From IMG/VR virus record IMGVR_UViG_3300048121_001678, positions 124,001-188,000 of that record: DNA of 64,000 bases; one strand, given 5' to 3'. Positions 2,694-53,639 of the stretch are shown here, piece by piece. The notes beneath the pieces are model-generated. The model searched no databases, was not told the DNA's origin, and worked only from the letters and a program-made list of their open reading frames with translations. Position numbers and translations under genes: made by a program. How positions within the stretch are numbered: position 1 is the stretch's first letter; the number at the start of each line of letters is the position of its first letter.

Positions 2694-4386
2694 AATTATC
2701 AATTATTGGTTGTACTATCATATTTAAACCACTGTATCTTACTTGTGGTGACATCTGATAAAAGTTTATGTCTTTAAAGGGATAATGAGCACCATTTAAA
2801 AATGGGTAATCAACACCAACACCTTCACTATCAACATATCCGTAAGGATAAAGGTCTCTCCATCTCCATCTCTCCTCAAAATTTGAGTAAAACGCATAAT
2901 CAGGAATATTATCAACATCCTTTACGTTACCCGTTTCAACATATGACGAAAATTCTTTTACGTTAATTTTATGATAAGGGTAATAAACATAACCAATAGG
3001 AACCGCAGGATTATTTCTCATAAAAAAGTGGTCAACATTAAAACTATATTTATGTAAAAGTGGCGATATTACATTTTCAGTCATTAAAAAGTCATTCCAT
3101 TCACAAAAATCACCTAATAGTTCGTCACCATTTGATAAATTTTCATTATAATAAAATTGTTTACCATTTTTGGTGTATGTTGATAATGGTATATTATCTT
3201 TATTGTTACTATTAGTTGGTAACCACCAATTATCCACCACATTTTCAAGACGATTAAATTCCCAACCTATATTAATTGAGGTGTTTTGATTTGTTGGAGA
3301 CGGCTTATTAAACCAACCCATATAACCCTTATTAAGAATCGTTACAAATAATTCAGTTAAGGGCCTATCTTGGTTATCCCTATATTTCGATATATCAATG
3401 TCTTTTTCGAACGTATAGGATGCTGTTTGTGAACTATTTCTAACTGAAACTCGTTGTACATTATTTGGCGTTAGTGCCGAATACTCTAATTTTGAATTAT
3501 TATTAAATGGAATGTTTTCAAAACCCATTCTAGCTAAATTATAATCCTTAATATCTGTTAATATTTTGTGTTTTCTAACATAATACTTTGATGTGGTTTC
3601 GTCTGAGTTATTTTTATTAATAACCCTTTTAAGTGTACCCGTTACACCATCACCAAACGTAGTTCCCGTATACCCTAAATCATATATAGAAAAAACATTT
3701 AAATCACTTTTATATTCCTCATCACCCAATTCATAAACTTGAAAATAATATTCTCCATTGTAGTCAAATGATAATTTAGCGTACTCCCCAACACTTAAAT
3801 TATGATTTCCACCACAGTAAAAGGTAATCAGTTCTTTACCACTCACCTTCCTTTTTTTCATTACGAATGGAATACCGTCACTTACATTAAATAATGTCGT
3901 AGCACTTAATCTTTCATTGGTGTAGGACATTGTCTGAGCAGTTACATTTTCAAACGCGTATGAGAGATACATAGTCCAATTATATGTCGTTGCACTTTTT
4001 GTGACTAAATCAACATGACCATCTATACCTTCAGTCCTTAAGAAACTAAACTCATCATATTGTGGGTACCCTCTCCAATCATTACTAGTGACTGAGTTAA
4101 GAGCATCTACATAATATAAATCATTTCTAAATGGAGAATATGTTGTTTTACCAGTATATATATTATCAAAAATATTACTTAATTTACCCGTAATTCTTAT
4201 AGTGTTAGACGATTGACGTTCTTTATCAAACCTTTCAGCTAAATTTACTATAACTGTACGGTCACCTTCAACCATTTGTCTTTTCTGACCTTCTAAAGTA
4301 ATTGGTAATCCACTATCTAAAGTGGGTGCCCCTTTATACTGTTTTTCGCTCGGAACTATTCTTATATTGTTTGGTTCCTTACTCAT
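2686..4386 (-). CDS. Hypothetical virion/baseplate-associated protein
   Basis: 566 aa, aromatic and beta-rich, ATGA overlap with the upstream gene. Confidence 0.6.
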   Translation of the reverse strand: MSKEPNNIRIVPSEKQYKGAPTLDSGLPITLEGQKRQMVEGDRTVIVNLAERFDKERQSSNTIRITGKLSNIFDNIYTGKTTYSPFRNDLYYVDALNSVTSNDWRGYPQYDEFSFLRTEGIDGHVDLVTKSATTYNWTMYLSYAFENVTAQTMSYTNERLSATTLFNVSDGIPFVMKKRKVSGKELITFYCGGNHNLSVGEYAKLSFDYNGEYYFQVYELGDEEYKSDLNVFSIYDLGYTGTTFGDGVTGTLKRVINKNNSDETTSKYYVRKHKILTDIKDYNLARMGFENIPFNNNSKLEYSALTPNNVQRVSVRNSSQTASYTFEKDIDISKYRDNQDRPLTELFVTILNKGYMGWFNKPSPTNQNTSINIGWEFNRLENVVDNWWLPTNSNNKDNIPLSTYTKNGKQFYYNENLSNGDELLGDFCEWNDFLMTENVISPLLHKYSFNVDHFFMRNNPAVPIGYVYYPYHKINVKEFSSYVETGNVKDVDNIPDYAFYSNFEERWRWRDLYPYGYVDSEGVGVDYPFLNGAHYPFKDINFYQMSPQVRYSGLNMIVQPIIDNCE

Positions 4387-7300
4387 AATATTTCTTGGTT
4401 AAGTATAAATTTATCAATATATTTGTTCATCGCAGATTTACCCGACCTAAGACCAAAATAAAAATGATAGGGTGCACCAACTAACAACTTATCTCTATAT
4501 TTTCCTTGACTATTATACGTAATATTAGTACCAGTTAATTTTGAATTATATATAAATCCTGGTTTTTCACTAGTTGGTGTCTGTATTGAAGATGGAAACG
4601 TATGTGGGTTAGTTAATCTATCAATAGATTGGTAGTTTACCGTATATATACTACTTGTAGTATTTTTATATGACCAATCATTATCCTCATCTCCAAAAAT
4701 AACACCGTTATTTTTAACCGTCCATGGGTGGAACGGTATTTCTTGGTCTTTAAAACCATAGTAATTAAATAACGGACTAGACACTTGATTGTCTCTAAAT
4801 GTTACTCTACCTGGTGTTATTAAGTCTCTATCAATAGTATTTCCCTCAAAGAATATCCCAATATTTGGGTCGTTTGAATTCACATCGTAATATATTGCAT
4901 CTCCAGAGTAATTATTACCTAAGAAAGGTGTAACACCAAATTCTGAGTTAATACTAATTAATTGGGATAAATCACCGTCTAATCTTTGGTTTTCTCTACT
5001 GAATAATTTTCTTATTGATGCATTACCAAGACCAGTTATTTGACCAAGCCAGGTAGTGTTTGATAGTCTACTTATAATAAAAACTTGTAATAAATCTGAG
5101 GTATCTTTATAGGACGTCGAACTAACACTATCAATAATATACCCCTGATAGTCATCATTAAAACATATCTCCTGTAAAAATTCGTCTCTAGGTCCCAAAT
5201 CCATAATAGTCGTAGGGTTACCTAACATCACATTATTTTGACCAGGGTAAGTATTACCGTTATTTTTAAGTGGCGGTAATTTACCTGTGAAACTACCATT
5301 GTTAAATGGTGATGCTCTGTAGAAAAATGAATTATTTATTTCTTGGTACGAAATCGTGTCTTTACAATAATCATAATCTGGTGATGTTAAGAATTTTGTA
5401 TCGTTAATATCATTACTATAAACATCTTGTTTTTGAAAAGAATACATATATAATGTACCGTTTACCCAGTTATTTACAAATGTTAATGACATTACATTAC
5501 GGCATATACCAAACATCATTCTAAATCTAGCCTTCCACTCAGTAAAGTTACCAATATCTCTACCAATCGAGAAATATGGTTTCTGTAATAAAGTATAACA
5601 CCCATTCTTAACTAATGTTGGATTAGTGTTACTCGGACAATTTGGTATAACTATTATGGTATTATTTGGACCCGGTTGGTAACATTCTAGTGGTACCATA
5701 TTTGCACATGAAAAAGAATCCGTAACACTATTGATTGATGCATTATTGTTAAACTCATCATCTAAAGATTCCGCACCATCACTAGTATCAAAACCATTTT
5801 CACTTAACGATTCACCGCCGTCAGCGTCAACTTTAAATACCGCAAAATCTCTATTCAAGTGAAAAGCCATACTATTATGGTTACTAATACCAATAGTCTC
5901 ATTATCCGATGTCGGTAAATTATCACTCCTAATAATTAATTTTGGATTTGGACCACTAATATTTACATTTATATTACCGTATTTTGGTGAAATAGCATTC
6001 CCTTGTGGACTTGCAGCCGGTCCATTGAATCCAGGCGATACTAATAGTGTACCACCATTTACTATGTTTTGACTAACATTAACTGTGGGATTAGAAGAAG
6101 CAAATAACCTAATTTTATTTATATTATCATTTGATGTTACAACATTACCCGCAGATGAGGTGGCGTAAGTACTTAGATTCCAGGTTCCGTTAAAATTCTC
6201 GCCTAATGACGAATAATATTTTATCTTATTTGACGTTACCGTAGAATATGCAGATGGGTCAACCGCAAAATTATAAGGTTCGTGATAAAGTTTTTGGTTT
6301 GGGTCTGTGTATGATATTGTATGAGATGTATTACTATATCTGTTACTCGTAATTTCTTGAATGGGGACATTCATATAAAAGTCACCACTCACTACTTCAG
6401 TACCATAACCTTGACCAGATAATTTTGATAAATCATATTTAATATTTTGTTTATCTGTCCAAACATCAACACCCCTAACCATAATAACCAATTTAAAATT
6501 ATTTGTTAGGTTAGAACCCATCAAGGTAAATGGGTTACCCACCACATAACCTACACTATTATTATCCGGATTAAAATAAGGTATTTCAGATTGAGGAAGA
6601 TTAAAATGTCGATTTATTATACCACCATTTGTGTTTTGTATATCAGTAAATGTTTTAGTAGTGATGACCTGAAAATACTCAACACCTGTCTTAAATTCAT
6701 ATTCTTTTTCAGTTGTTGACGCACTTACGGCAACTGTTGCGTTGGCTAGTCCACCATTTTCATTAATATAGTTAATAGTTTTTGTGGCGGTTAACATCGA
6801 TGTTCCTGTAATTGATTGAGAACCAAATTGATTTATTGGGTTTGTACTTCCACTATAATTTGTGTCATTTATATCACCTACATCGTTGAATGTGACGATA
6901 TCTCCCTGATTGAATGAACCGTTAGACACTAACATCATAACAACATTATCTGTATATTCTGGTCCCCCATTAACTTCAGTTTTAATTATATTTTGACCAT
7001 TAGTCGTATTATATGTCGAATTAAAGTATCTTGACCTAACATTCATAAGATTCATTGACTGAGCAACTGTCGCCTGACTTGTCAAAAAATATTGTGAGGG
7101 GAGTGTTGGAAATGTTAGGTCCAAACCAGTATAGTCTCTAGTTATTGGTAATCCGTAATGTGGTGAATTTAAATCTGCATATCCAGCAAGCCCATATCTA
7201 AAACCGAATAAATTAGCCTGATATTTTTCATTTTTCTTACTTTGACTACCTGAATAATTATCTGGGTCCATACCAACAGGTTTTTCATTAGCTGGGTCAC

Positions 7301-9593
7301 CAGCTAATTTAGACCATGTAGTAGTATTTGTAAGTGGAGCCAAAATACTTTCACCACTATTATCCCATACTACATATGATTGACCTATATTTACACCACC
7401 ACTACCACTACTACTCTTACCTGTTAATATATTTGTAGTTATCTCATCACCATCTAAATCATCAACATCGCAATCGCAAGTTAGACAATCAGGATAACTC
7501 ATCATTGGTAAATTAAAACTTTTAAACTTAAATTTAACAAGGAGTGGTGACACAACAATAGCGAACGCCGTCGCAGCAGCCGCGAATACAAGCGCCAATA
7601 ACGCATTGACCACTATCAAACCAACCGCCGGAAATGAACTAACTGCCGCGATACCAAATTGAACCGCCTGAAACGCTAAAAACGCCGGAAAAAATATCGC
7701 TAAAAACCATTTAAGTATCGGCCAAAGTCCCGCGATTACATGTAATAGAACTATCAATGGTATCGCCACAAAACCAATTATCGTAATTATTATATTAAAT
7801 AAAAGAAATAAGAAATCAAAATTTCTAACTCCGTCATTCGTTGGAAATTTATTAGTTGTTGACTCACATCCTCTATCAAGTATCTCTTTAATACCCATAA
7901 ATTTAGCACGACCCGAACCTTTTCTATGTTCGTCAATCATTTGAGCAGTAGTATACACCTTATTGTATACCATATCATAAAAGAAATCTTCACATTTAAC
8001 ACCGGCTTCTTTATCCGCATATTCATTCCAATTTAATGAAAACCCATAACTCTTTTGAAACTGTGAATATCGGTAATCATATAATGTGTAACTAACATTT
8101 ACAGGTACAATGAACCCACCTGTAGAATTTTGTTTTTTAGTAACCCGTATCTCTAATGTACCACCCGATGGAAAATCTATCCACTTCTCAGTTCTTAGCT
8201 GTCCATTAACATAAGTTTCTATTTTTTCCGCATCAGTATTTTGTAATACTTCAACACTACGATTAAATGGTATAGTGATAAATGATGTTTGAACTTCGTT
8301 ACTATTGTTAAATACTTCAACTAAATTACCAACAGGTGTAGATAACGTACTAGGGTCAACACCAGGATTTGACGCATTTCCTTGCCAACCGTACTCACGA
8401 ATTTGTGGGACCAGGAAATTCGCTCTAATAATATCACCTTTAATAAAATTAAGAGTACCATCAGTGATAGCAGGTCCATTTTCCTCAGACTGATACTTAA
8501 CCTTAAATCTATATTTACCTTTTGTCGGTATACCTATTGAAGGGTCATTAGATGTCACCTGTTCACCAAACTCATTAGTAATTACATAATCTAAATTCAT
8601 TGGAATATCAGTGACAAACGTACCCTCATCATCAATAACTTTACCCCCATTAGGTAGTAAGTATTGTTCCAATACTGGATATCCATCCTCATCCAAATCT
8701 ATTGATTGTCTCACAGATAAAACCTCACCCGGTCCTGTAACCAACCCACATAAATCACCCTGCTCTGTTCTTGGCTTACAATTCTTCTTTAACATCTGAC
8801 TATCCGATGACGAAAAAATAGAACCCATAAAGACTGCGGTCGGCTGAATCTCAATGTTTATATCCCTTAAATCGAAATCAGTTCTTGTTATCCCAATATT
8901 ACATAAATCCTCTTGACCCCAAAAAGAGGCAACATCAATATCTTTAACTTGATTTATAATTTGAGGTAATGAATTAATATCTTGTGATGATTTAAATTGG
9001 GAACCATTGAACTGTGATGACACACCTCTACCCATTCTAATCAAATCTTGAGGTCTCAAAGAAAAACACCCCATATTAGATAAATCTAAATCTAACACTA
9101 ATTTTTGATTACCGAGTGGGACCCCTGTTATCATAAAATCACCAGAGTCATTTGTCTTAACAGTATACCTATAGTATTTTTCGTATATTTCTAAAACCTC
9201 ACTTCGGGTCATTACATCAGACCTTGATGGGAATGTTCCTGTCGGCGTATGTCCTCCGTATTGTTTTTCGTATGGAAGTAAGTTATATCTATACCCATCC
9301 TCATTCTTATCTGTAACAGACTTATATGGATATAATGTAGATATTACTGGGTCTTGTAAGTCTATTTCGTCTATTGGTACGAATATCGATACCGTAGCAT
9401 TAGGTATACCAAATCCACTGTTAGCCACCACACGACCAACAACAACACCGTAATCGGCACAAAATCTTGAGTACACGTCTTCTTGTCTTAACTTTAAAGA
9501 AAGTATCTCTAAAAAGTCAAAATCTTGTTCAACCGTAACATTAATATTTTGGTCGGTTCCTAACTTGGTTCTTATTCTATATGATTTAGACAT
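4383..9593 (-). CDS. Large tail/baseplate-associated protein with an N-terminal carboxypeptidase-regulatory-like beta domain and an internal multi-helix hydrophobic segment
   Basis: GVVVGRVVANSGFGIPNATVSIF...TNDSGDFMITGVPLG prealbumin-like motif; about 100 aa hydrophobic stretch near aa 590-690; directly downstream of the gp6-like gene. Confidence 0.6.
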   Translation of the reverse strand: MSKSYRIRTKLGTDQNINVTVEQDFDFLEILSLKLRQEDVYSRFCADYGVVVGRVVANSGFGIPNATVSIFVPIDEIDLQDPVISTLYPYKSVTDKNEDGYRYNLLPYEKQYGGHTPTGTFPSRSDVMTRSEVLEIYEKYYRYTVKTNDSGDFMITGVPLGNQKLVLDLDLSNMGCFSLRPQDLIRMGRGVSSQFNGSQFKSSQDINSLPQIINQVKDIDVASFWGQEDLCNIGITRTDFDLRDINIEIQPTAVFMGSIFSSSDSQMLKKNCKPRTEQGDLCGLVTGPGEVLSVRQSIDLDEDGYPVLEQYLLPNGGKVIDDEGTFVTDIPMNLDYVITNEFGEQVTSNDPSIGIPTKGKYRFKVKYQSEENGPAITDGTLNFIKGDIIRANFLVPQIREYGWQGNASNPGVDPSTLSTPVGNLVEVFNNSNEVQTSFITIPFNRSVEVLQNTDAEKIETYVNGQLRTEKWIDFPSGGTLEIRVTKKQNSTGGFIVPVNVSYTLYDYRYSQFQKSYGFSLNWNEYADKEAGVKCEDFFYDMVYNKVYTTAQMIDEHRKGSGRAKFMGIKEILDRGCESTTNKFPTNDGVRNFDFLFLLFNIIITIIGFVAIPLIVLLHVIAGLWPILKWFLAIFFPAFLAFQAVQFGIAAVSSFPAVGLIVVNALLALVFAAAATAFAIVVSPLLVKFKFKSFNLPMMSYPDCLTCDCDVDDLDGDEITTNILTGKSSSGSGGVNIGQSYVVWDNSGESILAPLTNTTTWSKLAGDPANEKPVGMDPDNYSGSQSKKNEKYQANLFGFRYGLAGYADLNSPHYGLPITRDYTGLDLTFPTLPSQYFLTSQATVAQSMNLMNVRSRYFNSTYNTTNGQNIIKTEVNGGPEYTDNVVMMLVSNGSFNQGDIVTFNDVGDINDTNYSGSTNPINQFGSQSITGTSMLTATKTINYINENGGLANATVAVSASTTEKEYEFKTGVEYFQVITTKTFTDIQNTNGGIINRHFNLPQSEIPYFNPDNNSVGYVVGNPFTLMGSNLTNNFKLVIMVRGVDVWTDKQNIKYDLSKLSGQGYGTEVVSGDFYMNVPIQEITSNRYSNTSHTISYTDPNQKLYHEPYNFAVDPSAYSTVTSNKIKYYSSLGENFNGTWNLSTYATSSAGNVVTSNDNINKIRLFASSNPTVNVSQNIVNGGTLLVSPGFNGPAASPQGNAISPKYGNINVNISGPNPKLIIRSDNLPTSDNETIGISNHNSMAFHLNRDFAVFKVDADGGESLSENGFDTSDGAESLDDEFNNNASINSVTDSFSCANMVPLECYQPGPNNTIIVIPNCPSNTNPTLVKNGCYTLLQKPYFSIGRDIGNFTEWKARFRMMFGICRNVMSLTFVNNWVNGTLYMYSFQKQDVYSNDINDTKFLTSPDYDYCKDTISYQEINNSFFYRASPFNNGSFTGKLPPLKNNGNTYPGQNNVMLGNPTTIMDLGPRDEFLQEICFNDDYQGYIIDSVSSTSYKDTSDLLQVFIISRLSNTTWLGQITGLGNASIRKLFSRENQRLDGDLSQLISINSEFGVTPFLGNNYSGDAIYYDVNSNDPNIGIFFEGNTIDRDLITPGRVTFRDNQVSSPLFNYYGFKDQEIPFHPWTVKNNGVIFGDEDNDWSYKNTTSSIYTVNYQSIDRLTNPHTFPSSIQTPTSEKPGFIYNSKLTGTNITYNSQGKYRDKLLVGAPYHFYFGLRSGKSAMNKYIDKFILNQEIL

Positions 9594-12010: not shown

Positions 12011-12038
12011 AAAAAAAAGAGGACCGAAGTCCTCTTTT
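12011..12038 (-). terminator. Intrinsic terminator with a cUUCGg loop
   Basis: Minus strand reads AAAAGAGGAC-TTCG-GTCCTC-TTTTTTTT, just after nrdA. Confidence 0.9.
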
Positions 12039-12065: not shown

Positions 12066-13772
12066 TTATCCCTCACATGCAACACATTGTAAATCATTCA
12101 GCCCTAACTTCTTTCTTGAGAAAGCTTGAGCGGAATTCATTGAGTGTTGGTAGTATAATGTTTTAACCCCTAATTTCCAAGAATCAATAAGAAGTTTGTT
12201 AACATCTTTTGTTGGCATATCAGGTGACACCATTAAATTTAACGACTGTGATTGGTCAATATATGTTTGACGTACTGCCGCTTGATTGATAATTGATGAT
12301 TGGTTAATTTCCGCAAAAGTTCTAAATACATCTTTTTGTTCATCATTTAAAAAATCTAAATGTTGTACTGAACCATCTGCCTGTTTAATACTATTCCACA
12401 CTTCTTTAGTATCCTTATCCATAGTTACTAATAACTCTTTAAGAACAGGATTCTTAATTGTGACTTTCATCTTAGCAACATCCTTTACATAACAATTAGA
12501 CCATATGGGTTCGATTGATTGTGAAACCTGTCCAAGAATAAACGCCGATGAGGTTGTGGGTGCAACTGCGTTAAGCGTTACATTTCTTCTCCCATACCCT
12601 TTTAAGTATTCAGGTTCCCCAAACATTTCAGCTAATTGCTCCGATGCTTTATATGACTTTTCTTTGATGTTTTTAAATACCTCAACATTCAGTCTTGCCG
12701 TTTCTCTTGTATCGAAAGCCAATCCTTTAGATTGAAGTAATGAGTGCCATCCTAATACACCTAATCCTAGTGCTCTTTGTCTTTTAGAGAAGTTATATGC
12801 TTTCTCTAAGTAGAAGAACGCTCTTTTACCCTCAATTGTTCCGTTGTCTCTTAACTCTTCAATTTTCGTCAATAATTCAGTAACTACAGCATCTAAGAAC
12901 ATAGTCATCACTTCAACAGCGTCTGTGTCTTTCCACTCATCATAATGAAGAACATTCATTGATGATAAAACACAAACAAATGATTCTTCCTCTGAATTGT
13001 GTAACGCAATCTCAGAACAAAGATTTGAATTATTAATTGTCGCTCCTTTGTCTTTATAAACGTCAACAGTACCATTGTTCATTGTGTCATGGAACATAAT
13101 ATATGGATACCCAATCTCACCTCTTCTTTGAATTACCTTAGCCCATATTGCTCTCTTATCTTGGTCACCAGCAATCATATCATTCATAAACTCATCAGTT
13201 ACTGTAACTGCGTGTGTTAAATCTTGGATAGGGAACCCTTCTGTACCTATTTCTAAGAACTCCATAATATCTGGATGTTCAACAGGTAGGTATGGTGAGA
13301 AACGACCTCTTCTAGTCGAACCTTGTGATATATTATCTACAACACTCTCAAAAAGATTCATAAAGTGTACTGCACCTGGTGCCAATCCGTTATCTGTGAT
13401 TTCAGCACCACGTCCTCGGATATTACCGAAGTAACCTGAAGTACCTCCACCCATTTTAGACATTTCACCAACCTCAGCTTGCGTATATAAAATTGATTCA
13501 ATATTATCACCAATATTAGAACCAAAACAACTTACAGGTAAACCTCTCTTTTTTCCGAAGTTTGCCCATACAGGTGATGATAGGGAATACCAACCCTTAC
13601 CCATATAGTCATAAAATTTATCAGCAAAACCTTCTATACCTAAAAGTTTTTCTGCGTGGTTAGCGATTGTTCTAATCCTTTCTAATGGTTCCTCTCCCTC
13701 ACTTAGATATCCTCTACGTAGGAAGGTAATTGATTCTTCATTAATCCAATCAAATGGTTTTTTATTATTCAT
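12066..13772 (-). CDS. nrdA: Class I ribonucleotide reductase alpha subunit, short form without ATP-cone
   Basis: PVSCF, SNLCSEI (catalytic N/C/E), APTTSS, KTLYY and the C-terminal CVAC redox pair; 568 aa. Confidence 0.95.
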   Translation of the reverse strand: MNNKKPFDWINEESITFLRRGYLSEGEEPLERIRTIANHAEKLLGIEGFADKFYDYMGKGWYSLSSPVWANFGKKRGLPVSCFGSNIGDNIESILYTQAEVGEMSKMGGGTSGYFGNIRGRGAEITDNGLAPGAVHFMNLFESVVDNISQGSTRRGRFSPYLPVEHPDIMEFLEIGTEGFPIQDLTHAVTVTDEFMNDMIAGDQDKRAIWAKVIQRRGEIGYPYIMFHDTMNNGTVDVYKDKGATINNSNLCSEIALHNSEEESFVCVLSSMNVLHYDEWKDTDAVEVMTMFLDAVVTELLTKIEELRDNGTIEGKRAFFYLEKAYNFSKRQRALGLGVLGWHSLLQSKGLAFDTRETARLNVEVFKNIKEKSYKASEQLAEMFGEPEYLKGYGRRNVTLNAVAPTTSSAFILGQVSQSIEPIWSNCYVKDVAKMKVTIKNPVLKELLVTMDKDTKEVWNSIKQADGSVQHLDFLNDEQKDVFRTFAEINQSSIINQAAVRQTYIDQSQSLNLMVSPDMPTKDVNKLLIDSWKLGVKTLYYQHSMNSAQAFSRKKLGLNDLQCVACEG

Positions 13773-13791
13773 TGTATTTTTAATTTTTTTG

Positions 13792-15054
13792 TTAAAATAA
13801 ATCGTTAGATGTAATTGATTTCGACTTCTTACTGTAGTTAATACTTCTCTTATTAAAGAAATCTGTGTGTTTTGTAGTTAATATCTCATCATCAAACCAC
13901 TCTGTAGTTTCCAACAAAGATTCGTTAACTTCGAAGATACCATCTACACCAATAGAGTTTAATGATACATTAAATCTATGTTTAATAAATTCCATAGTTT
14001 GGTTTTTAGTTAAGAAATCTAAATCTCCCTCCTCAAAAATCCATTCTACGATTTCTGACTCCGCCTCATATGCTTCCATAGTTGCAACAATTAAGTCTTC
14101 TTTTAGTTCGTCTGTCCACCAACTTGGGTTTTCATTTTTAATTAAGTTTACCAAATCAAAACCAAATCCAGCATGTATGTTTTCTTCTTTTGATGTCGCT
14201 TCAACAGCGTTACTAATACCTTTCAACATATTCTTATGTTTATTGAATGACATAATAACTAAAAATTGTGAGAATAGTGACACATTCTCTACGAACATTG
14301 AGAATAGAACAACCGATTCGAAGTATTCCTTGTCTTCAACTGCCTTTGAATTTGTAATTGCTTTCTCTAAATACTTAATTCTTTTACGAATAGCAGGTAC
14401 TTGTAAAAGTGTTTCAAACTCATTATTTAATCCCAACAATTGTACTAAATGTGAGTAAGCATCAGCATGTCTCACCTCTGACTCTGCAAAAGTAGCACCA
14501 ACGTTACCAATCTCTGGTTTTGGCATTCTTTTGTATATGTCACCCCAAAATGATTTAACAGCAACCTCAATTTGTGAAATCGCCAACATTGCTCTTTTAA
14601 CTGCAGTTCTTTCTTTTTTGTCGAGATTCACTTTAAAGTCCTGAATATCAGAAGTAAAATTAAATTCTGTATGTACCCAATATGAGTGTCTAATAGCGTC
14701 AACATACTCATTAAGATTAGGGTACTCGTAAGGTTTTAAGTTCGTTCTTTTTGTAAAGATATTCGGACCATTATCCTTACGGTAAATGATGTATTCTTTT
14801 GCAACGTCATTTAGACCGTTATCCATAAGTTTATTCTCTACCATATCGTGTATTTCATCAACGTGAGGAACTCTATCTGGTTCCCCTCTGAAAATCCCTT
14901 TTCTCGTTATTCTTGCAATTTTTTCAGCCATATCATCATCAATATTACCGACACTCTTCATTGCTTTTAATACCGCATATTTTATTTTTTCGGACTGAAA
15001 CTCTACTTTCTCCCCGCTTCTTTTAATCACATAATTAGTTTCTTTACTGTTCAT
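13792..15054 (-). CDS. nrdB: Ribonucleotide reductase beta subunit with N-terminal ATP-cone (class Id-like)
   Basis: ATP-cone VIKRSG...EKIKYAV...VDEIHDMVENKLM...VAKEYIIYR; ferritin-like ligands QIEVAVK, ESEVRHADAY, VENVSLF, KEENIH. Confidence 0.92.
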   Translation of the reverse strand: MNSKETNYVIKRSGEKVEFQSEKIKYAVLKAMKSVGNIDDDMAEKIARITRKGIFRGEPDRVPHVDEIHDMVENKLMDNGLNDVAKEYIIYRKDNGPNIFTKRTNLKPYEYPNLNEYVDAIRHSYWVHTEFNFTSDIQDFKVNLDKKERTAVKRAMLAISQIEVAVKSFWGDIYKRMPKPEIGNVGATFAESEVRHADAYSHLVQLLGLNNEFETLLQVPAIRKRIKYLEKAITNSKAVEDKEYFESVVLFSMFVENVSLFSQFLVIMSFNKHKNMLKGISNAVEATSKEENIHAGFGFDLVNLIKNENPSWWTDELKEDLIVATMEAYEAESEIVEWIFEEGDLDFLTKNQTMEFIKHRFNVSLNSIGVDGIFEVNESLLETTEWFDDEILTTKHTDFFNKRSINYSKKSKSITSNDLF

Positions 15055-20959: not shown

Positions 20960-23900
20960 TTACAATCCGTTATTTTTAGACCATCTAAAGGCCTGTTTAA
21001 ATATTGGGATTGAATTATCATACGTCTTTTTTATTAATTTTTCATCGTCAGTGGTAGGGTTATTTAATATATCATTAAGTTCATTATCGGTATTAATTCT
21101 TCTAAACCAATTTCTAATATATACCTTAGAATACGCAACAGCATAATTATCTTCACTAAAGTCAGAACCTATATAGTCTGTCAGTTGAGTACGTACTGAG
21201 TTACTATTATATCTAACCAATAATGGGTCAAAAGACCCGTTAGGGTCACTGAATGAAAAGTAACTTCTAGCCCTACCGTCAGATGTTGATGACACACAAA
21301 ATTGTCCACTAACTTTATCATTATCTAAACCTGACCACCGACCACTATCAGTAGTTAACCCAACGTAGTTATTATTAATTCCTTTAACATAACCATTTTT
21401 ATAACCTTGTTCTCTCCAAACAGTACCAATTGTTAATCTTTTAACATCAAAATTAGTAGTTTTAGTATTAACATACGTTATAATATCATTATAAGAATAC
21501 TGTGTGTTTTGTTTAGTTATAAAATCTAAACCTTGGTAAGCACTTACTGGCGAACAATTACTTGAACCCACACTTGAACCATTAGTTGAGTTAGTACTAA
21601 CACCATTAGAGTTTGAAGACCCATTCTGTAATGTTGGTGTGGTAGAAGGTGTTTCACTTGTTGGTTTTGCTTCTTTAGGTTTTTTATATGATTTATTAAT
21701 TCTCTTTAGTAAATCAATATTAACACTCATTGTTAGTTCGGTAATACTCGGGAATGAATATTTAGAAATTCTAACACCACTAAATGTAGTGATAAAATTA
21801 CCAGGACTAATACTGTGAGACACATCTGTAATCCAATACGGACCTGTGAACATTGGTACGTATCTTAGGTTAAAATACATTGTCGGCTGTATCATCATAT
21901 TACCCATTGACATAATCTGACAATTATAACTTCTATTTTTATAGATATTATATAATGAAGTTGATTGTTGAGATGTTTTCGAACCTTTACTCTGATTCGC
22001 CATGTCTGTTAATATACGGAACGATTCTGAGGTATCTTTAAATTGTGATTGGTCTAAACTTACGGATTTAAATATCCCTTGATTTCTCACACCAAAGTCA
22101 ACATTGAAACCAACCACTTTATTTGAGAAAGCATAATCTGTTTTATTTGTTTGATTTTCCCTAAGAACCTGTGCCTTGTACATATCAAAGCTATCATCAC
22201 CAAACCTATAATCTATATTTTCTGTTTGTTTTAAATGTTTCGACACTTTATCTGTGTATAAACATAAAAACCGAGGTCTACTTTTATTATCGTCAACCTC
22301 TAAGAACGTACCAAATACGTCGGACGCTGAGTTTTCAAAACCTTCTTCAGGTTTCGCGTTTTTAGATGGTTCATTAACACCATAAAAATTCGTATAGGAT
22401 GGTAATGCCATAAATAATAGGTTATTACCCTTAAATAAATGACCTATCAATGTGTAAATAGAATTAGAACCTGACTTATCATTAATAAATCCTGTTAGTG
22501 TACTAACATCCACAATAAGCTTATCACCAATATCTCTGTTCGCCCTATCTAAAAATAAAAATTCCTCAAATAATGTTCTATTTTGAAAGTCACCCCCTGC
22601 AATCCATTTATCATTTAATGTTTTAAAGAATTCATACAACTCTAACTTAGCCACCTCTCCCGACATAGACGTTTTAATCTGTTCAGTCTCTTCAGTAATT
22701 TTAGGTAAGTCTTTATTTAGTTTGGTAAATAAATTGTTTTGTACCTTCTTTTGTGAATTATCCATCAATGTCAAATATTGATTAAACAGCGACATAAACT
22801 TAGTACTTGTCATTGTTGGGTCTTGATATTTTTGAGTGGCGTAAATTTGTATGATTGGACCCAATTGTCTAACATTATTTTCACTAAATAGAATATCCAT
22901 TTCAACAAAGAAATCTGTAATTGTTGAACCACTATCACTATACTTCATTCTATCCTCATCATACACACCGACCACTAATCTTAGGGCGTTCCACGCATCG
23001 GGGTATTGTGATTCACTAATAGCTATTGTTGTTAAATTACTTGCAGTGGGTAGTGAGTCATTAATATAGTTACCAAAATTAATTTTTTGATTCTGAGTTT
23101 GATATTTTGTATCATCAGTGAATGAGTACCAAACACGTCTATTAAAATTAGAAGGATTACCCTGTTTAAAAATAAAAGTTTCTGATAATAAATTTTGAAC
23201 AGTATTTCTTAAACTAATCATTTGTTGATTGGCTATTATTTGTCCGTCTAAATCAGATTGACCTGTTAATGTTGGTCTATTAATAAAAAACAAACCATTT
23301 AAACTTGTCATTAAATTTGGTTTAAGAATATCTTCAGCGGGTATATTATCACGAACAGGGTCTTTACAGAACTCTAAAAATTCAGTCTCAAACATATCCA
23401 TAATACCCTCATTAAACACCGCCAGTATTTCATCAATTGATGAGTATTCAGATACCGACTCTAAACTAAATGCCGTTTGGTTGTTAGTTGTATTATCAAT
23501 TGTTTTTATATATTGTCTATATGTTGGTTTTTTAATTAAAGACGTATCAAAATACCCATAGTGTGAACCACCCCAAAGAGTTTTTATTGAACCATCATAT
23601 AACGATTGTCTTAACGGCTCCCCCTCATATATGCCAGGAATTTTACATATTTCAAACTCATACTGATTAAAATTACCACCACCCGCAGAAGGATAACATA
23701 GTAACTTTTCTGTATTATTAGTATTATCATAGGTTTTAGGTTTATCGTAAAAAGTGTAATATGAGGACACGCTATACGTAGTGTTTCCTGAAGACATATT
23801 AATAATGGAATCCGAATTACTCGCAATCTTTAAACCATTACCATCAAATTGTGTATTACCACTAAAATAATTATCAAAGTCTGACTGGGTCGTACCACTA

Positions 23901-26900
23901 ATAAACTCATCATAACCAAATAAATAATTAACATCATTAACCAATTTAGGATAAAATCCAACGTTAGATGTGTTAAAATTAAAGGTAAATAAAGGCGGTA
24001 TTGATATTAGTGATGGGTTCATACTGTATGTTGTATTACCACTTCCACCATAGTTTGGGAACGTATATGTCTTTGTCTTTGATGGTGTGGTACTAAAAGG
24101 GTCGTATAAGTCGTCTTCATTGACACTATTCCAAACACTATCTAATATATCCACGTTTTCATTAATGTATTTTTTATACCTATGCCATATTGAACCGTAT
24201 TTAACAACCCATGCGTACGGCATCTTGTGTAGTGCACCGAACTTATTATAAATTGCAAAATTATAATCATTAGACTTACCACCAGTACCATGATTCATCT
24301 TTTCTTTTAACGTCTGAAGTGGTAATGAATTTAAATACATATAACCCATCGTAACATATGGATTATCCACATTATTTTTTCTGTTTTCGACAGACTCACT
24401 AAGTGAGTTTATAAAATATGGACTGTTCAATAAAGAGGTTGTCTGATATCTAGACGTGAAACCTGAATAATTATTTCCGTAATCTATTTTTCCTTCCGTA
24501 GCAAAATAATCATTATTTGTGATTGTTTTATCAAACTTAGTCTTAATTGAAGAATAACCAGGTATACTTATAGTCGCGTCTGTATTGTTCACCCACGAAC
24601 GGTTCAAACTAGGGGTGTCAGCAAAATCACCAAATAACCTATTCTCATTAAATGATGTTATTGTCATTTTACTATTTGAAAAGTACATGGAATTAATTGT
24701 TGAATTAGCCCCATTAACACTTGTTACACCACCACCTTTAGATATGTTTTTTCTTAACCAAGTTAGGTCTGTTAGAGGATAAACATCCGTAAAACTTATA
24801 GCATCAGTGTCTGATGACGACTTTAAAAAGTCGTTCATTTTTTGTTGACTCTCATCTGAAACGTCAATCACAGGTGAGTTTGACTCATAAGTTAATAAAT
24901 CATATAAACCATAATATTTTTCATTATATTCCCTAATATATGGTGTTACGAAAACATCGGCCAAATAAGTATTCCATAACTCACCAGTACCATTATTAGA
25001 AATATGAGATAGAACATTTTCAAAGTTTGACGAGTTTATTCCAAGTTTCTTAAGTTTCATCTTAAGATATGGGTCACTTTTAATTGAGTTTTTTATTGTT
25101 AACGTTTCGAAATCTGCGACCACCTGAAATAAATTCTGTGACGAGTTTTTTTCTCTATATATTTTACTGTAGTTTGATGATAGTAACGTCCTTTCCCATA
25201 ATTCATATAAGAAATTCACTTCACTTAAGTTGATATAAGGTGGGTTGTCATAAGGGAACTCCGTAGCATTTACGGGTATGGTTTTAATTTCTTTTTTTTC
25301 ATTTGTGAAATTAGCACTTCTTTGTTCCTCTTTTCTTTGTAGTTTACCTTTTATAAATTCTTCAATGAATTCTACTTCAGGCCACTTATCATACAAATAC
25401 GCCTTAGTTCTAGACTCAACTTTTGGGTCACCAACATATTTTACGACATATTTCTCATTACCGTCTTCGTCAGATTCTGTTTCGAAATATTGTGGCCATG
25501 GGTATATAATTTTTTCACCATCGTTAGTTGATAGAACACTATCCTTTGAATCAACACCATTAGCTGTTGACTCACTAATAATGACATTTTGTCTAATTGG
25601 GTCCGCTTTAACGTTCCACGCATCTCTATGTACCTCATCCATTAACCTATAAAACGCATCAACATTTGCCATCAACATACCCATAACATTTCTAATTGTC
25701 GGCTTAAACCCTAACCCTCCATCAGGACTTTCAATTTTTTGAGCCAATGCGGTAGATAACTCTTTCTGTATAGACTCGGCCTTATCGGTATATATTCTTT
25801 CAATCTTATCTAACTTATTTAAAAATGAACCAGGTAACGTCTTTTGAGAACCACTTACCTGACCAAAACCATAAAATTTAGAACTCAATTCTTCATCTAC
25901 CGTTAAGTCTTTGTTGTAATATTTGTCTTTAATTTCAAAATAACTAAGTGTCTCCGCAGAAAATTTAGTCAATTCAATTTCTGTGGGTGTCGCCTTTTTT
26001 TGTAACTCATAAGTCTTTTCAAGATTTAAATCATCATATTCTAAATCAAACATAAGGTCACTACTAGAAATAGTTACAGGTATGTTTGAAGATTGTTCTT
26101 TACCTAAAATACTATAAGTACCTTCGTCACCAAAAGTACCATTAGTCGTCAACTTATTATTATACTCATTAATTTTGGCGTCTAATAATGCTTGAGCAGA
26201 CTCTTGACCTTGTAACCCGTCAGCCCCCTTTTTTAGCCCATAATATAAATTACCTTCATTATCAACAAAAGTTTTACCTACATCTAAATTTTCAAAAGGC
26301 CATCTTTTAGACCTAAAAAGAGTAATATACTCTCTATATTGATTTAAAGTTTTTCTATATAATTCAATATCATTTAATACCGATAAATCCTCCTTACTAA
26401 ATTGTTGTCTTACATACTCTTCTAAACCATTTAGTCTCGAAGCAAGTGCAGATAGATTTAACCTTGGTATTGAGGGGTCTATTAGTCCCTTAGAGATATA
26501 TGTAGAATACACATCATTAATAACCTTACTACCTCTGGTTACTGTAACAGGTGTTGTTTGAACATCATTATTACCCGCAGCCATTTCTATTAGTCCTTGA
26601 ACATTTAACTGACTTTCTAATGAACTTAAATCTCCATTATAATCAGAAGGGTCTTCATTACTATCAATTAATAAATTCGTTTCATACATATGAGGTAACG
26701 CAAATAGTGCACCTAAAGATAAATCTGAAAGTATTGCGGCAGTACGACCAATAAATGAAACTGAAACTTTATAATTACCATCTGTAGGGTCAAATCGAGC
26801 GTTAAAACTTTTCATCATTAACTCATATTTGACAGCTTTACCGTAGTATCCTTTAACCGTTAGAAAGAATAATGGGTATGGTAATTGTAAAAATGCGGAA

Positions 26901-27439: not shown

Positions 27440-27746
27440 AGTAATAGAAATGTGTGTCTAAAGCATTTTTATAATCCTGTAAAGATTGTACCAATGGAAA
27501 TGGAACAATCAAAACAGACCCATCAGGTATGTCTTTTTCTAAACTACCATATTGAGGATTAGCCATTTGTATTAACCAACCAAAATAAGGTGTTTGGTAA
27601 AATTCAAAACTAATTTTATCTAATCTACTCACATCTGCTTTATAAACATACCTCTTATCTGTAGTTTTTGAAGGCAAAACTATATTTGGGACCACAGTTT
27701 GTTGCCCATTTAATAAAAACTTTTGATATCTATCGTAGTATCTCAT
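27429..27746 (-). CDS. Baseplate wedge gp53-like / LysM-like (tail X) protein
   Basis: SRLDKISFEFYQTPYFGWLIQMANP...IPDGSVLIVP. Confidence 0.8.
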   Translation of the reverse strand: MRYYDRYQKFLLNGQQTVVPNIVLPSKTTDKRYVYKADVSRLDKISFEFYQTPYFGWLIQMANPQYGSLEKDIPDGSVLIVPFPLVQSLQDYKNALDTHFYYYGR

Positions 27747-49807: not shown

Positions 49808-50161
49808 TTAAATAATATTGATATATAAATTTTCTCTGATTGGGGTAATGAGTTCACCCATTGAATTAATTATCGAGAATTCACCCAAAAAACGACCTTT
49901 TCTTTTAGTGTCCCTCAATAACCACTTATAATATATGTAGTATGTGATTGGGGCGTTAGGGTTGTCTTGTGTTTTTTCAGTTATAAACGCATTGTTCATA
50001 ATAATCTTTGGAATGCCAGTCGACTCTTCTTTCATTGAAAAACGGATTGTTGCGTTGTCTAAATCAGCGTCGAACAATTTCCAAGAATCTGTTCGACCAT
50101 CTCTTACAACTTCCATCTTTAAGATTGGTAACTCACTGTTTTGTTTTATAAAGAATTCCAT
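49808..50161 (-). CDS. Small BppU-N-like adaptor domain protein
   Basis: MEFFIKQNSELPILKM...ATIRFSM...YKW...DT...G.F.GEF; paralogous to the N-terminus of 53640..58664. Confidence 0.6.
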   Translation of the reverse strand: MEFFIKQNSELPILKMEVVRDGRTDSWKLFDADLDNATIRFSMKEESTGIPKIIMNNAFITEKTQDNPNAPITYYIYYKWLLRDTKRKGRFLGEFSIINSMGELITPIRENLYINII

Positions 50162-50180
50162 AATTATAAATATATCAATA

Positions 50181-50208
50181 AAGAAAAACCCCTCCGAAGA
50201 GGGGTTTT
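50181..50208 (-). terminator. Intrinsic terminator with a cUUCGg loop
   Basis: Minus strand AAAACCCCTC-TTCG-GAGGGG-TTTTTCTTT. Confidence 0.9.
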
Positions 50209-50231
50209 ATATTTTATAGGTTTTTAATTTA

Positions 50232-53200: not shown

Positions 53201-53585
53201 TTGAAGTGGATTGTGGAGTACTTGTTGGTGTTCTTGTTGGAGAAACCGTTTGAGTAATCGTTGCCGTCATCGTAGGTGTTACCGTAGATGTTATCGTTGC
53301 AGTGATAGATGGTGTTACCGATGGTGTATTTGACGGGGTAATTGTTGGGGTAACTGTCTGTGTTTGTGTTGGGGTTGGTGTTGGATGACCAATTACATAA
53401 GTGTAAGATGCTTCGTATGTTTCAGAATAGATTGTGTAGGTACCGTAAAAATAATCAGTAACTAAATCAGCCGGCATAGTAACAACACCAAAGTCCGTTA
53501 CAGTCGAACCTGTATCCGCAGTAAAAGTAATGTGAACACTTTCACCTACTAAATTATCACTCAAAAATCTAATTCCATCTGCCAT
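50232..53585 (-). CDS. Mucin-like Thr/Pro/Ser-rich surface or fibre protein with Cys-rich and C-terminal beta domains
   Basis: About 700 aa of TPT/TVTP/TSTP repeats, a Cys-rich globular region, a second TP linker and a beta-rich tip; two TATTTATA copies upstream. Confidence 0.75.
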
Positions 53586-53639
53586 TGTGTATAAATACTT
53601 TAATATATTATTTTATAAATAGTTTATCTTATGAGAATA

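What the first reader, a model, noticed from the sequence alone, without database searches (positions are those of the whole stretch)
12066..15054. Phage RNR with the ATP-cone on NrdB and class Id (superoxide-activated Mn) signature
Seen: NrdA lacks an ATP-cone while NrdB carries one at its N-terminus. The first metal ligand is Glu with a Lys four residues later (QIEVAVK). Known: ATP-cone-NrdB fusion was described in the flavobacterium Leeuwenhoekiella blandensis, and class Id enzymes such as Flavobacterium johnsoniae use all-Glu/His dimanganese sites, with that Lys helping capture superoxide. Inference: the phage has a dATP-regulated class Id RNR, which hints at a Bacteroidota donor or host.
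Basis: partly seen in the sequence, partly recalled or inferred. Interest (0 to 1): 0.6.

Follow-up and report, generated by a model that had tools for sequence, protein, structure and literature searches.

The report
Jumbo-phage class Id RNR, ATP-cone on NrdB
A 297-kb uncultured jumbo phage carries a two-gene ribonucleotide reductase of the manganese-dependent class Id type whose on/off nucleotide sensor (ATP-cone) sits on the small subunit; this arrangement is real but already described in bacteria and viruses, so it is a new member of a known kind, and it does not identify the phage's host.

Summary
Window 13792-15054(-) encodes a 420-aa NrdB with an N-terminal ATP-cone plus an R2 core. Window 12066-13772(-) encodes a 568-aa NrdA with no cone. 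QIEVAVK is residues 161-167 (Glu163, Lys167).

All ten class Id signature residues are present and invariant in about 200 relatives. The best solved matches are L. blandensis ATP-cone NrdB (5OLK, E 3e-158) and class Id alpha subunits (6DQX, 6DQW). The phage genome has no NrdI, no second RNR and no other ATP-cone. It does encode thioredoxins and a glutaredoxin.

The cone is under purifying selection. It keeps most mapped nucleotide-contact residues and all six mapped tetramer-interface residues. A dATP-inhibited, Mn-dependent class Id enzyme is therefore the best reading, by homology only.

The host or donor inference is not supported by the RNR. The same fusion occurs in Patescibacteria, Thiotrichales and phages of Bacillota and Salicola. 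The window's protein sits in a separate clade of syntenic jumbo-phage contigs, 55-65% identical to any cellular copy. Its branching order is unresolved (AU p 0.53).

Virus-encoded ATP-cone NrdBi was already reported in 2018.

Side finding: the window also encodes a conserved MnSOD fusion protein (43810-45348), notable because SOD blocks class Id activation in vitro.

The parts
13792..15054 (-). nrdB: 420-aa radical-generating subunit, ATP-cone fused to a class Id (NrdBi) R2 core
   Evidence: ORF; Pfam domains. PDB 5OLK aligns over the full length, E 3e-158. The AF2 model has pLDDT 80, and Foldseek's top hits are 5OLK and 6SF5 (TMt 0.97, rmsd 1.2 A).
14773..15033 (-). ATP-cone domain (residues 8-94): predicted beta-hairpin plus four helices
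   Evidence: Pfam PF03477, E 1e-19. The genome scan gives 75.7 bits. Model secondary structure: E8-10, E16-18, H21-35, H40-55, H65-78, H82-93. K11, R12, F19, Y88, R92 and interface residues D70, M77, K86, I89, I90 are conserved. dN/dS is 0.04-0.13.
13924..14748 (-). Ferritin-like R2 core (residues 103-377) with metal ligands E163, E193, H196, E256, E291, H294 and second-sphere K167, W170, Y200, T287
   Evidence: Pfam PF00268, E 1e-57. Residues were mapped onto L. blandensis numbering and the papers. All ten are invariant in about 200 homologues.
14554..14574 (-). QIEVAVK (residues 161-167): the first metal ligand Glu163 and Lys167 in the segment that refolds on metal loading in L. blandensis NrdB
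   Evidence: Translation; alignment. The role of the Lys is described in PMC8463856 and PMC6754362.
13795..13878 (-). Disordered C-terminal tail (residues 393-420) with invariant Tyr407 and terminal Asp-Leu-Phe: the predicted NrdA-binding and radical-transfer tail
   Evidence: pLDDT below 50 for 393-420. Y407, D418, L419 and F420 are invariant or nearly so. dN is about 0 in the viral clade. The role of the tail Tyr is from PMC8463856.
12066..13772 (-). nrdA: 568-aa catalytic subunit of the minimal class Id (NrdAi) type, without an ATP-cone
   Evidence: TIGR02510 scores 746 bits against a cut-off of 602. PDB 6DQX E 4e-205 and 6DQW E 1e-167. C82, N250, C252, E254, C267, Y540 and Y541 are invariant in all 70 homologues. 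The C-terminal C563-x-x-C566 pair is present in the 55-56 whose sequence reaches the end; the other 14-15 are gapped there.
12015..12038 (-). Intrinsic-terminator-like hairpin (10-bp stem, T-run) 27 nt after the nrdA stop codon: the likely end of the transcription unit

Best explanation
nrdB and nrdA form a two-gene unit at the end of the replication module of an uncultured 297-kb myovirus-like jumbo phage. The neighbouring gene order is SSB, UvsX-like recombinase, 5'-3' exonuclease, DnaB helicase, nrdB, nrdA, terminator, then baseplate genes.

They encode a class Id (NrdAi/NrdBi) aerobic ribonucleotide reductase. By homology, NrdB assembles a dimanganese centre on E163, E193, H196, E256, E291 and H294. 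A reduced oxygen species, most likely superoxide attracted by Lys167, oxidises it to Mn(III)Mn(IV) without an NrdI activase. This metal centre, not a tyrosyl radical, initiates radical transfer through Tyr200, the tail Tyr407 and NrdA Tyr540/541 to Cys252. NrdA is re-reduced through its C-terminal CxxC pair, plausibly by the phage's own thioredoxin or glutaredoxin.

Overall activity is probably switched by the N-terminal ATP-cone of NrdB. With ATP the enzyme would be an active alpha2beta2. With dATP bound, cone-cone contacts would make beta4 tetramers that hold NrdA in non-productive complexes, as shown for L. blandensis and F. ignava.

Shown here: gene structure, domain architecture, every signature residue, fold, conservation, purifying selection and genomic context. 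Inferred: metal, oxidant, dATP inhibition and oligomer states.
For: Architecture:
- Pfam ATP-cone plus R2 on NrdB; no cone on NrdA.
- Only one cone and one RNR in the genome; no NrdI and no NrdD.

Subclass:
- Best solved relatives are class Id beta subunits: 5OLK 3e-158, 6SF4, 8DQ3, 6CWO 1.5e-96. Class Ic scores 1e-20 and class Ia 1e-4.
- NrdA matches class Id alpha 6DQX and 6DQW, and TIGR02510 above its cut-off.
- Foldseek on the AF2 model ranks class Id first, then Ic, then Ia.

Residues:
- E163, K167, W170, E193, H196, Y200, E256, T287, E291, H294 and Y407 are invariant in about 200 homologues.
- NrdA's catalytic Cys, Asn, Glu and Tyr residues are invariant; the C-terminal CxxC is present wherever the aligned sequence reaches the end.

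Cone function:
- K11, R12, Y88 and R92 match the nucleotide-contacting Lys7, Arg8, Tyr83 and Arg87 of P. copri NrdD.
- D70, M77, K86, I89, I90 and R92 match the L. blandensis tetramer-interface residues Asp73, Met80, Lys89, Ile92, Ile93 and Arg95.
- dN/dS of the cone is 0.04-0.13 in the viral clade.

Context:
- The gene pair is conserved in the same neighbourhood in other ~290-kb phage contigs and in 477 viral-contig loci.
- A terminator follows nrdA.
- The genome encodes a WCGPC thioredoxin and a CPFC glutaredoxin.

Mechanism of the reference enzymes: PMC5794259, PMC6754362, PMC8350387, PMC6187632 and PMC8463856.
Against: - Nothing biochemical is known for this protein. Metal and oxidant cannot be read from sequence.
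- H2O2 also activates the L. blandensis and F. ignava enzymes.
- The viral clade differs from all cellular cone-bearing NrdBi at two otherwise invariant cone positions: Asp66 for Glu and His69 for Gln.
- The position matching P. copri Arg91 is Gly96 in the window. Nucleotide affinity or stoichiometry may therefore differ; F. ignava already binds one ATP where L. blandensis binds two.
- The AF2 model shows helix B uninterrupted, like the apo form, so the metal-induced loop is not demonstrated.
- The same phage encodes a MnSOD-type protein, and SOD inhibits class Id cofactor assembly in vitro.
- A test of cone self-association could not be run.
Confidence: 0.82

Rival explanations
1. The enzyme is class Id, but the cone is a regulator with altered logic in this phage lineage. 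It might sense only ATP, bind a single nucleotide, or be inhibited at a different dATP set-point. This would suit a phage that needs very high dNTP flux.
For: - Asp66 and His69 are fixed in all 80 viral-clade sequences, while 111 cellular sequences have Glu and Gln.
- Salicola jumbo phage SCTP-2 has the same Asp and His.
- The position matching Arg91 of P. copri NrdD is Gly96.
- Cones of F. ignava and L. blandensis already differ in ATP stoichiometry.
Against: - The phosphate-binding Lys-Arg pair, the stacking Tyr88, Arg92 and all six mapped interface residues are kept.
- His at the equivalent position occurs in the dATP-inhibited E. coli NrdA cone (my recollection, not tested here).
- No structural or binding data are available.
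Confidence: 0.12
2. The cone is an inherited but functionless appendage, and the phage RNR is not activity-regulated.
For: Most NrdBi proteins and all NrdAi proteins lack a cone and still function. Examples are the 14 cone-less copies among 74 Flavobacteriaceae hits and the Rhizobium and Chryseobacterium phages.
Against: - The cone has dN/dS of 0.04-0.13 across the viral clade, with synonymous sites saturated.
- It is kept full length in all 120 best database relatives.
- Most mapped nucleotide-contact residues and all six mapped interface residues are conserved.
Confidence: 0.04
3. The enzyme is a class Ia, Ib or Ic RNR (Fe or Mn with a tyrosyl radical, or Mn/Fe) that was mis-assigned as class Id.
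For: Many database records of related phage genes are annotated 'class Ia (aerobic)'. A Tyr is present at the radical position (Y200).
Against: - The first ligand is Glu, not Asp.
- Lys167 and Thr287 are present.
- There is no NrdI.
- Sequence and fold matches to class Id are stronger by tens of orders of magnitude than to Ic, Ia or Ib.
- NrdA is the 568-aa cone-less type.
Confidence: 0.02

Closest known systems
Leeuwenhoekiella blandensis NrdAi/NrdBi (PDB 5OLK, 6SF4, 6SF5; eLife 2018 PMC5794259; JBIC 2019 PMC6754362; Front Mol Biosci 2021 PMC8350387)
   Same: - The same architecture: ATP-cone, short linker, R2 core and disordered tail.
- A cone-less ~570-aa NrdA.
- The same ligands, Lys, Trp, Tyr and Thr.
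- The same cone-cone interface residues.
- The alignment covers the full length, E 3e-158; core TM 0.97 and rmsd 1.2 A.
   Different: - Identity is only about 56-64%.
- The host is a phage, not a flavobacterium.
- The cone has Asp66 and His69 where the bacterial proteins have Glu and Gln.
- The linkers are shorter: 3-residue and 4-residue gaps relative to L. blandensis.
- Nothing has been measured for this protein.
Flavobacterium johnsoniae class Id RNR (PDB 6CWO/6CWP/6CWQ beta, 6DQW alpha; summarised in PMC8463856)
   Same: The Glu/Tyr pairing, Lys four residues after the first Glu, the Thr partner of the Tyr, no NrdI, and a minimal alpha subunit.
   Different: F. johnsoniae beta has no ATP-cone and is about 44-46% identical. 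Cone-less Flavobacteriaceae copies form the outgroup in the trees.
ATP-cone NrdBi of cultured phages: Staphylococcus Silviavirus (Romulus, Remus, SA11), Sporosarcina phage Lietuvens, Salicola phage SCTP-2
   Same: A full-length cone plus NrdBi followed by nrdA in a phage replication module. SCTP-2 shares the Asp/His cone variant.
   Different: They are 48-51% identical. The Staphylococcus and Sporosarcina copies branch inside the Patescibacteria group, not with the window's clade. None has been characterised biochemically, as far as the papers I read show.
Facklamia ignava Grx::ATP-cone::NrdBi (PMC6187632)
   Same: Class Id with a cone on beta, dATP-induced beta4, and a Mn(III)Mn(IV) cofactor.
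   Different: It has an extra N-terminal glutaredoxin domain. In the phage, the glutaredoxin and thioredoxin are separate genes about 90 kb away.

Membership tests
Class Id RNR beta (NrdBi) | Glu as the first metal ligand, paired with a conserved second-sphere Tyr (Asp/Tyr in Ia and Ib; Glu/Phe in Ic) | tested here: met
   E163 and Y200 are invariant in about 200 homologues. The definition is from PMC8463856.
Class Id RNR beta (NrdBi) | Complete Glu/Glu/His/Glu/Glu/His ligand set | tested here: met
   E163, E193, H196, E256, E291 and H294 map to L. blandensis E170, E200, H203, E263, E298 and H301.
Class Id RNR beta (NrdBi) | Conserved Lys four residues after the first Glu, Thr partner of the Tyr, and Trp on helix 1 | tested here: met
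   K167, T287 and W170 are invariant. Their roles are described.
Class Id RNR beta (NrdBi) | No NrdI activase encoded with the RNR | tested here: met
   PF07972 was not found in the 297-kb genome, while the control genomes matched.
Class Id RNR beta (NrdBi) | Closest sequence and fold relatives are characterised class Id proteins | tested here: met
   rank class Id first, then Ic, then Ia. RNRdb's own NrdBi profile was not available, so membership rests on these rankings and on the trees.
Class Id RNR beta (NrdBi) | Mn(III)Mn(IV) cofactor, no tyrosyl radical, activation by superoxide without a helper protein | not testable with these tools
   This needs EPR, metal analysis and activation assays with and without SOD.
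Class Id RNR alpha (NrdAi) | Minimal ~565-aa catalytic subunit lacking an ATP-cone, with catalytic Cys/Asn/Cys/Glu/Cys, a Tyr-Tyr pair and a C-terminal CxxC | tested here: met
   The protein is 568 aa with no PF03477 match. TIGR02510 scores 746 bits against a cut-off of 602. It matches 6DQX and 6DQW. C82, N250, C252, E254, C267, Y540, Y541, C563 and C566 are present. The median length of 565 aa is from PMC9531940.
ATP-cone::NrdBi fusion (L. blandensis type) | N-terminal ATP-cone above Pfam's gathering score, in the same polypeptide as the R2 core | tested here: met
   71-76 bits against a cut-off of 25.8, in a single ORF without stops.
ATP-cone::NrdBi fusion (L. blandensis type) | Nucleotide-contacting residues of two-nucleotide cones | tested here: inconclusive
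   K11, R12, Y88 and R92 are conserved. The Arg91 equivalent is Gly96, and Glu/Gln are replaced by Asp66/His69 in the viral clade. The residue list of the 5OLK figure was not available as text.
ATP-cone::NrdBi fusion (L. blandensis type) | Cone-cone tetramer interface (L. blandensis Asp73, Met80, Lys89, Ile92, Ile93, Arg95) | tested here: met
   D70, M77, K86, I89, I90 and R92 occupy the equivalent positions.
ATP-cone::NrdBi fusion (L. blandensis type) | dATP-induced beta4 formation and inhibition; activation by ATP | not testable with these tools
Biochemistry is needed.

The most novel reading that the evidence does not exclude
The marine jumbo-phage clade may be the earliest-branching lineage of cone-bearing NrdBi. 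In that case the ATP-cone::NrdBi fusion arose in, or was spread by, large phages rather than by flavobacteria.

The lineage may also run a phage-tuned version of the enzyme. It has a cone with a fixed Asp66/His69 pocket variant, shared with Salicola jumbo phage SCTP-2. It also has a co-conserved MnSOD fusion protein that could control the superoxide/H2O2 supply for a superoxide-activated RNR.
Probability: 0.1. Interest if true: 0.55.

Novelty: new member of a known kind. Interest (0 to 1): 0.27.

Why it matters
The finding adds a large, environmentally abundant phage lineage to the known ATP-cone::NrdBi (class Id) enzymes. This query found 477 viral-contig loci and thousands of metagenomic proteins 83-95% identical.

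It also shows that the fusion is spread over at least three bacterial phyla and several phage groups. That corrects the 2018 picture of a mainly flavobacterial trait.

For phage biology, it shows that a jumbo phage keeps feedback control over its own dNTP supply through the small subunit. The co-occurrence with a phage MnSOD fusion gives a concrete, testable question: how does a superoxide-dependent RNR get activated in an infected cell?

None of this changes how the enzyme class is understood.

Tried and rejected
- **Host from cultured relatives.** The DnaB helicase and baseplate proteins have only 25-29% identical matches: Microcystis phage Mel-JY01, Flavobacterium phage immuto and an uncultured 484-kb phage. 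There is no close cultured relative.
- **Host from the phage tmRNA.** BLAST against 301 Bacteroidota genomes matched only the universal 3' 30 nt. Dead end.
- **Host from the Bacteroidota -7 promoter motif TAnnTTTG.** Upstream enrichment is 1.3-fold in the phage and 2.8-fold in the Flavobacteriaceae control loci. Inconclusive.
- **Donor of the SOD domain.** The best Bacteroidota identity is 43-49%, and PDB E-values are similar for Bacillota enzymes. No signal.
- **Cone remnant in Rhizobium phage TM40.** The tblastn extension to residue 68 lies outside the annotated CDS. BLASTP starts at residue 98. Rejected.
- **Names for close homologues.** The cluster look-up gave no organism names.
- Neither was retried by other means.
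- **C-terminal part of the SOD fusion.** Foldseek gave only weak PD-(D/E)xK nuclease hits, best E 4e-3.
- **The large representative-protein search.** Not used, because family scans had already settled the proteins' identity.
Full report
**What is there.** The window is bases 124001-188000 of a 297,164-bp IMG/VR virus record that CheckV rates 99% complete. It has 34% G+C. The finding's coordinates cover exactly two adjacent minus-strand ORFs:
- nrdB, 13792-15054, 420 aa.
- nrdA, 12066-13772, 568 aa, starting 19 nt after the nrdB stop codon.

A 10-bp-stem hairpin with a T-run lies 27 nt after nrdA. Upstream on the same strand lie a DnaB-like helicase, a 5'-3' exonuclease, a UvsX-like recombinase and a gp32-like SSB. 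Downstream lie gp25-like and gp6-like baseplate wedge genes. The RNR pair therefore closes the replication module of a myovirus-type jumbo phage.

**Checking the observation.** NrdB matches Pfam ATP-cone at residues 8-94 (E 1e-19) and Ribonuc_red_sm at 103-377 (E 1e-57). NrdA matches only the all-alpha and barrel domains of the large subunit. A family scan of the whole phage genome finds one ATP-cone (on NrdB), one NrdA, no NrdD and no NrdI. The heptad QIEVAVK is residues 161-167.

**Which kind of RNR.** Several lines of evidence point to class Id.
- *NrdB against solved structures.* It aligns over its full length with the ATP-cone NrdB of L. blandensis (5OLK, E 3e-158). Next come other class Id beta subunits: 6SF4, 8DQ3 and F. 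johnsoniae 6CWO at 1.5e-96. Class Ic scores about 1e-20 and E. coli class Ia about 1e-4.
- *NrdA.* It matches the two solved class Id alpha subunits (6DQX 4e-205, 6DQW 1e-167). It also exceeds the cut-off of TIGR02510 (746 against 602 bits). Its 568 residues fit the 'minimal' class Id alpha, median 565 aa (PMC9531940).
- *Predicted fold.* An AlphaFold2 model of NrdB (pLDDT 80, pTM 0.70) shows a beta-hairpin plus four helices for the cone, a helical core, and a disordered tail from residue 393. Foldseek ranks 5OLK first. The core superposes on Mn-loaded L. blandensis NrdB with TM 0.97 and rmsd 1.2 A, followed by Aggregatibacter and F. johnsoniae class Id, then Ic, then Ia.

**Signature residues.** I used the alignment together with the published numbering.
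- The ligands are E163, E193, H196, E256, E291 and H294.
- K167 is the Lys proposed to attract superoxide.
- Y200 and T287 are the sequestered Tyr and its Thr partner.
- W170 is the NrdBi-specific Trp.

All ten are invariant in about 200 homologues from phages and bacteria. So are the tail Tyr407 and the terminal Asp-Leu-Phe. In NrdA, C82, N250, C252, E254, C267 and the Y540-Y541 pair are invariant. The C-terminal CxxC pair (C563, C566) is present in every homologue whose sequence reaches the end.

**Is the cone likely to work?**
- Across 80 viral and 111 cellular cone-bearing sequences, K11, R12, F19, A27, A31, V72, E73, A85, Y88, I89, Y91 and R92 are nearly invariant.
- K11, R12, Y88 and R92 correspond to Lys7, Arg8, Tyr83 and Arg87, which contact the two nucleotides in P. 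copri NrdD. That paper states the binding mode is the same as in L. blandensis NrdB.
- The L. blandensis tetramer-interface residues Asp73, Met80, Lys89, Ile92, Ile93 and Arg95 correspond to D70, M77, K86, I89, I90 and R92.
- Pairwise Nei-Gojobori estimates against ten viral relatives give dN/dS of 0.04-0.13 for the cone, 0.014-0.046 for the core, and dN near zero for the tail. Synonymous sites are saturated.

The cone is therefore maintained by selection. There are three differences from the cellular proteins:
- Asp66 replaces Glu in the whole viral clade, and also in Salicola phage SCTP-2.
- His69 replaces Gln in the same sequences.
- Gly96 stands where P. copri has Arg91.

Their effect is unknown.

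**Mechanism.** By homology with L. blandensis, F. ignava and F. johnsoniae, the enzyme should use a Mn(III)Mn(IV) centre. That centre is formed from Mn(II) and superoxide (less efficiently from H2O2), without NrdI. It initiates the radical itself. dATP binding to the cone should drive beta2 to beta4 and trap NrdA in inactive complexes. The phage supplies likely reductants: a WCGPC thioredoxin and a CPFC glutaredoxin side by side at genome position 44.6-45.1 kb, and a second thioredoxin at 274.7 kb. It also has a ThyA thymidylate synthase. All catalytic and regulatory behaviour is inferred, not shown.

**Relatives and the donor or host idea.** The protein has thousands of metagenomic relatives. 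All of the best 120 (83-95% identical) carry both domains. In IMG/VR, 477 loci encode relatives at 82-100% identity. Two of the 83-88% relatives were inspected. They lie in the same DnaB-nrdB-nrdA-gp25 neighbourhood on contigs of 214-430 kb. This is a widespread lineage of large phages.

In species-representative bacterial genomes the best matches are only 55-62% identical. They come from Polaribacter and Crocinitomix, and in larger numbers from Patescibacteria and Thiotrichales. In a sample of 301 Flavobacteriaceae genomes, 60 have a cone-bearing copy (58-65% identical) and 14 have a cone-less copy (42-46%).

Among cultured phages, full-length cone-bearing copies occur in Staphylococcus Silviavirus, Sporosarcina phage Lietuvens and Salicola phage SCTP-2 (48-51% identical). 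Phages of Chryseobacterium, Flavobacterium, Maribacter and Cellulophaga have cone-less NrdB at 30-40%.

Maximum-likelihood trees were rooted on the cone-less Flavobacteriaceae copies.
- The window falls in a viral-contig clade, with SH-aLRT 98 in the 83-row tree and 91 in the 38-row tree.
- That clade is sister to a group holding all cellular cone-bearing sequences, with support 93 and 83.
- Flavobacteriaceae, Thiotrichales and Patescibacteria each form their own clade. The Patescibacteria clade includes the Staphylococcus and Sporosarcina phages.
- I left out L001 (the window's own copy) and L014/L164 (a copy interrupted by a TGA) from all trees. L204, L206 and L048 were also left out of the AU test.
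- The AU test does not reject a viral+Bacteroidota clade: p 0.53, with the log-likelihood difference essentially zero.

The RNR therefore neither supports nor excludes a Bacteroidota donor, and the architecture alone does not point to that phylum.

Separately, only 3% of 247 phage genes have a Shine-Dalgarno-like motif upstream, against a background of 7%. The figure is 1% in Flavobacteriaceae loci, 7% in Patescibacteria loci and 23% in Thiotrichales loci. This is compatible with a Bacteroidota host but is weak evidence. Other host tests failed or were inconclusive.

[quoted passage not shown] The finding is thus a new, uncharacterised member of a known kind. Two things are modestly new: the size of the phage clade, and the abundance of the fusion in Patescibacteria and Thiotrichales.

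**Side finding that bears on the mechanism.** The window also encodes a 512-aa protein at 43810-45348(+). Residues 39-228 are a complete Fe/Mn superoxide dismutase (Pfam E 2e-20 and 6.5e-39). The best PDB matches are MnSODs at 3e-55, and the ligand motifs are present.

It is fused to a ~280-aa C-terminal part that is conserved at 61-99% identity in 20 related viral contigs. Two of those contigs also carry the cone-bearing nrdB about 30 kb away, as in the window. The C-terminal part gives only weak leads to PD-(D/E)xK nucleases: Atlas feature scores of 0.90-0.91 and a best Foldseek E of 4e-3. No cultured phage has this fusion.

SOD blocks class Id cofactor assembly in vitro. The coexistence is therefore worth an experiment, but no functional link is shown.

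**Limits.** No read-level or expression data could be obtained, and no complex prediction could be run.

**Verdict.** The class Id plus regulatory-cone interpretation is supported by homology. The Bacteroidota inference is not supported by the RNR. The finding is a new member of a known kind, of low to moderate interest.

Noticed in passing
window 43810-45348 (+): A 512-aa protein has a complete Fe/Mn superoxide dismutase at residues 39-228; the best PDB matches are MnSODs, E 3e-55. It is fused to a conserved ~280-aa C-terminal part with weak PD-(D/E)xK nuclease leads. The fusion is conserved full length in 20 related viral contigs, two of which also carry the cone-bearing nrdB. It is notable next to a superoxide-activated RNR.
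   Followed up: partly
window 14848-14860 (-), NrdB residues 66 and 69: All 80 viral-clade sequences, and Salicola phage SCTP-2, have Asp66 and His69 in the ATP-cone. All 111 cellular cone-bearing NrdBi have Glu and Gln at these positions. The effect on nucleotide sensing is unknown.
   Followed up: partly
outside the window: G000 C1 234463-234852: The phage encodes a tmRNA (Rfam RF00023, 82.5 bits, E 4e-32; found first by ARAGORN). A cluster of five tRNAs (Arg, Met, Thr, Ser, Tyr) lies at 267.7-268.5 kb.
   Followed up: partly
outside the window: G000 C1 43000-46700 (L222): Three adjacent genes encode a CPFC glutaredoxin-like protein (92 aa), a WCGPC thioredoxin (105 aa) and a 376-aa glutamine-synthetase-like protein. 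A second thioredoxin lies at 274.7 kb, and a ThyA lies at 11.5-12.4 kb.
   Followed up: partly
whole phage genome: Shine-Dalgarno-like motifs precede only 3% of 247 predicted genes, below the 7% background. This resembles the Flavobacteriaceae loci (1%). The Bacteroidota -7 promoter motif is not clearly enriched.
   Followed up: partly
window 50001-58000: G+C rises to 0.38-0.43, against about 0.33 elsewhere. GC skew is strongly positive (up to +0.47) over the giant minus-strand ORFs 50232-53585 (1117 aa) and 53640-58664 (1674 aa). The cause was not examined.
   Followed up: no
window 4383-9593, 20960-27439, 27746-32383 (all -): Very large ORFs of 1736, 2159 and 1545 aa flank the replication and baseplate modules. 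The 1736-aa protein has a hydrophobic central stretch. Its syntenic counterparts in related contigs have no Pfam hits on record. The ORFs themselves were not scanned.
   Followed up: no
window 42011-43765 (+): An SNF2-family helicase (SNF2-rel_dom plus Helicase_C) lies immediately upstream of the SOD fusion gene, in a short plus-strand island within a mostly minus-strand region.
   Followed up: no
L048 (JALVEJ010000288.1, a 1.7-kb contig of a 'Flavobacteriales' MAG): Its NrdB groups inside the Patescibacteria clade, so the contig is probably mis-binned.
   Followed up: no
L014 / L164 (OZ245922.1, Patescibacteria chromosome): The nrdB match contains one in-frame TGA. This could mean an alternative genetic code in that organism or a broken gene. 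The copy was left out of the trees.
   Followed up: no
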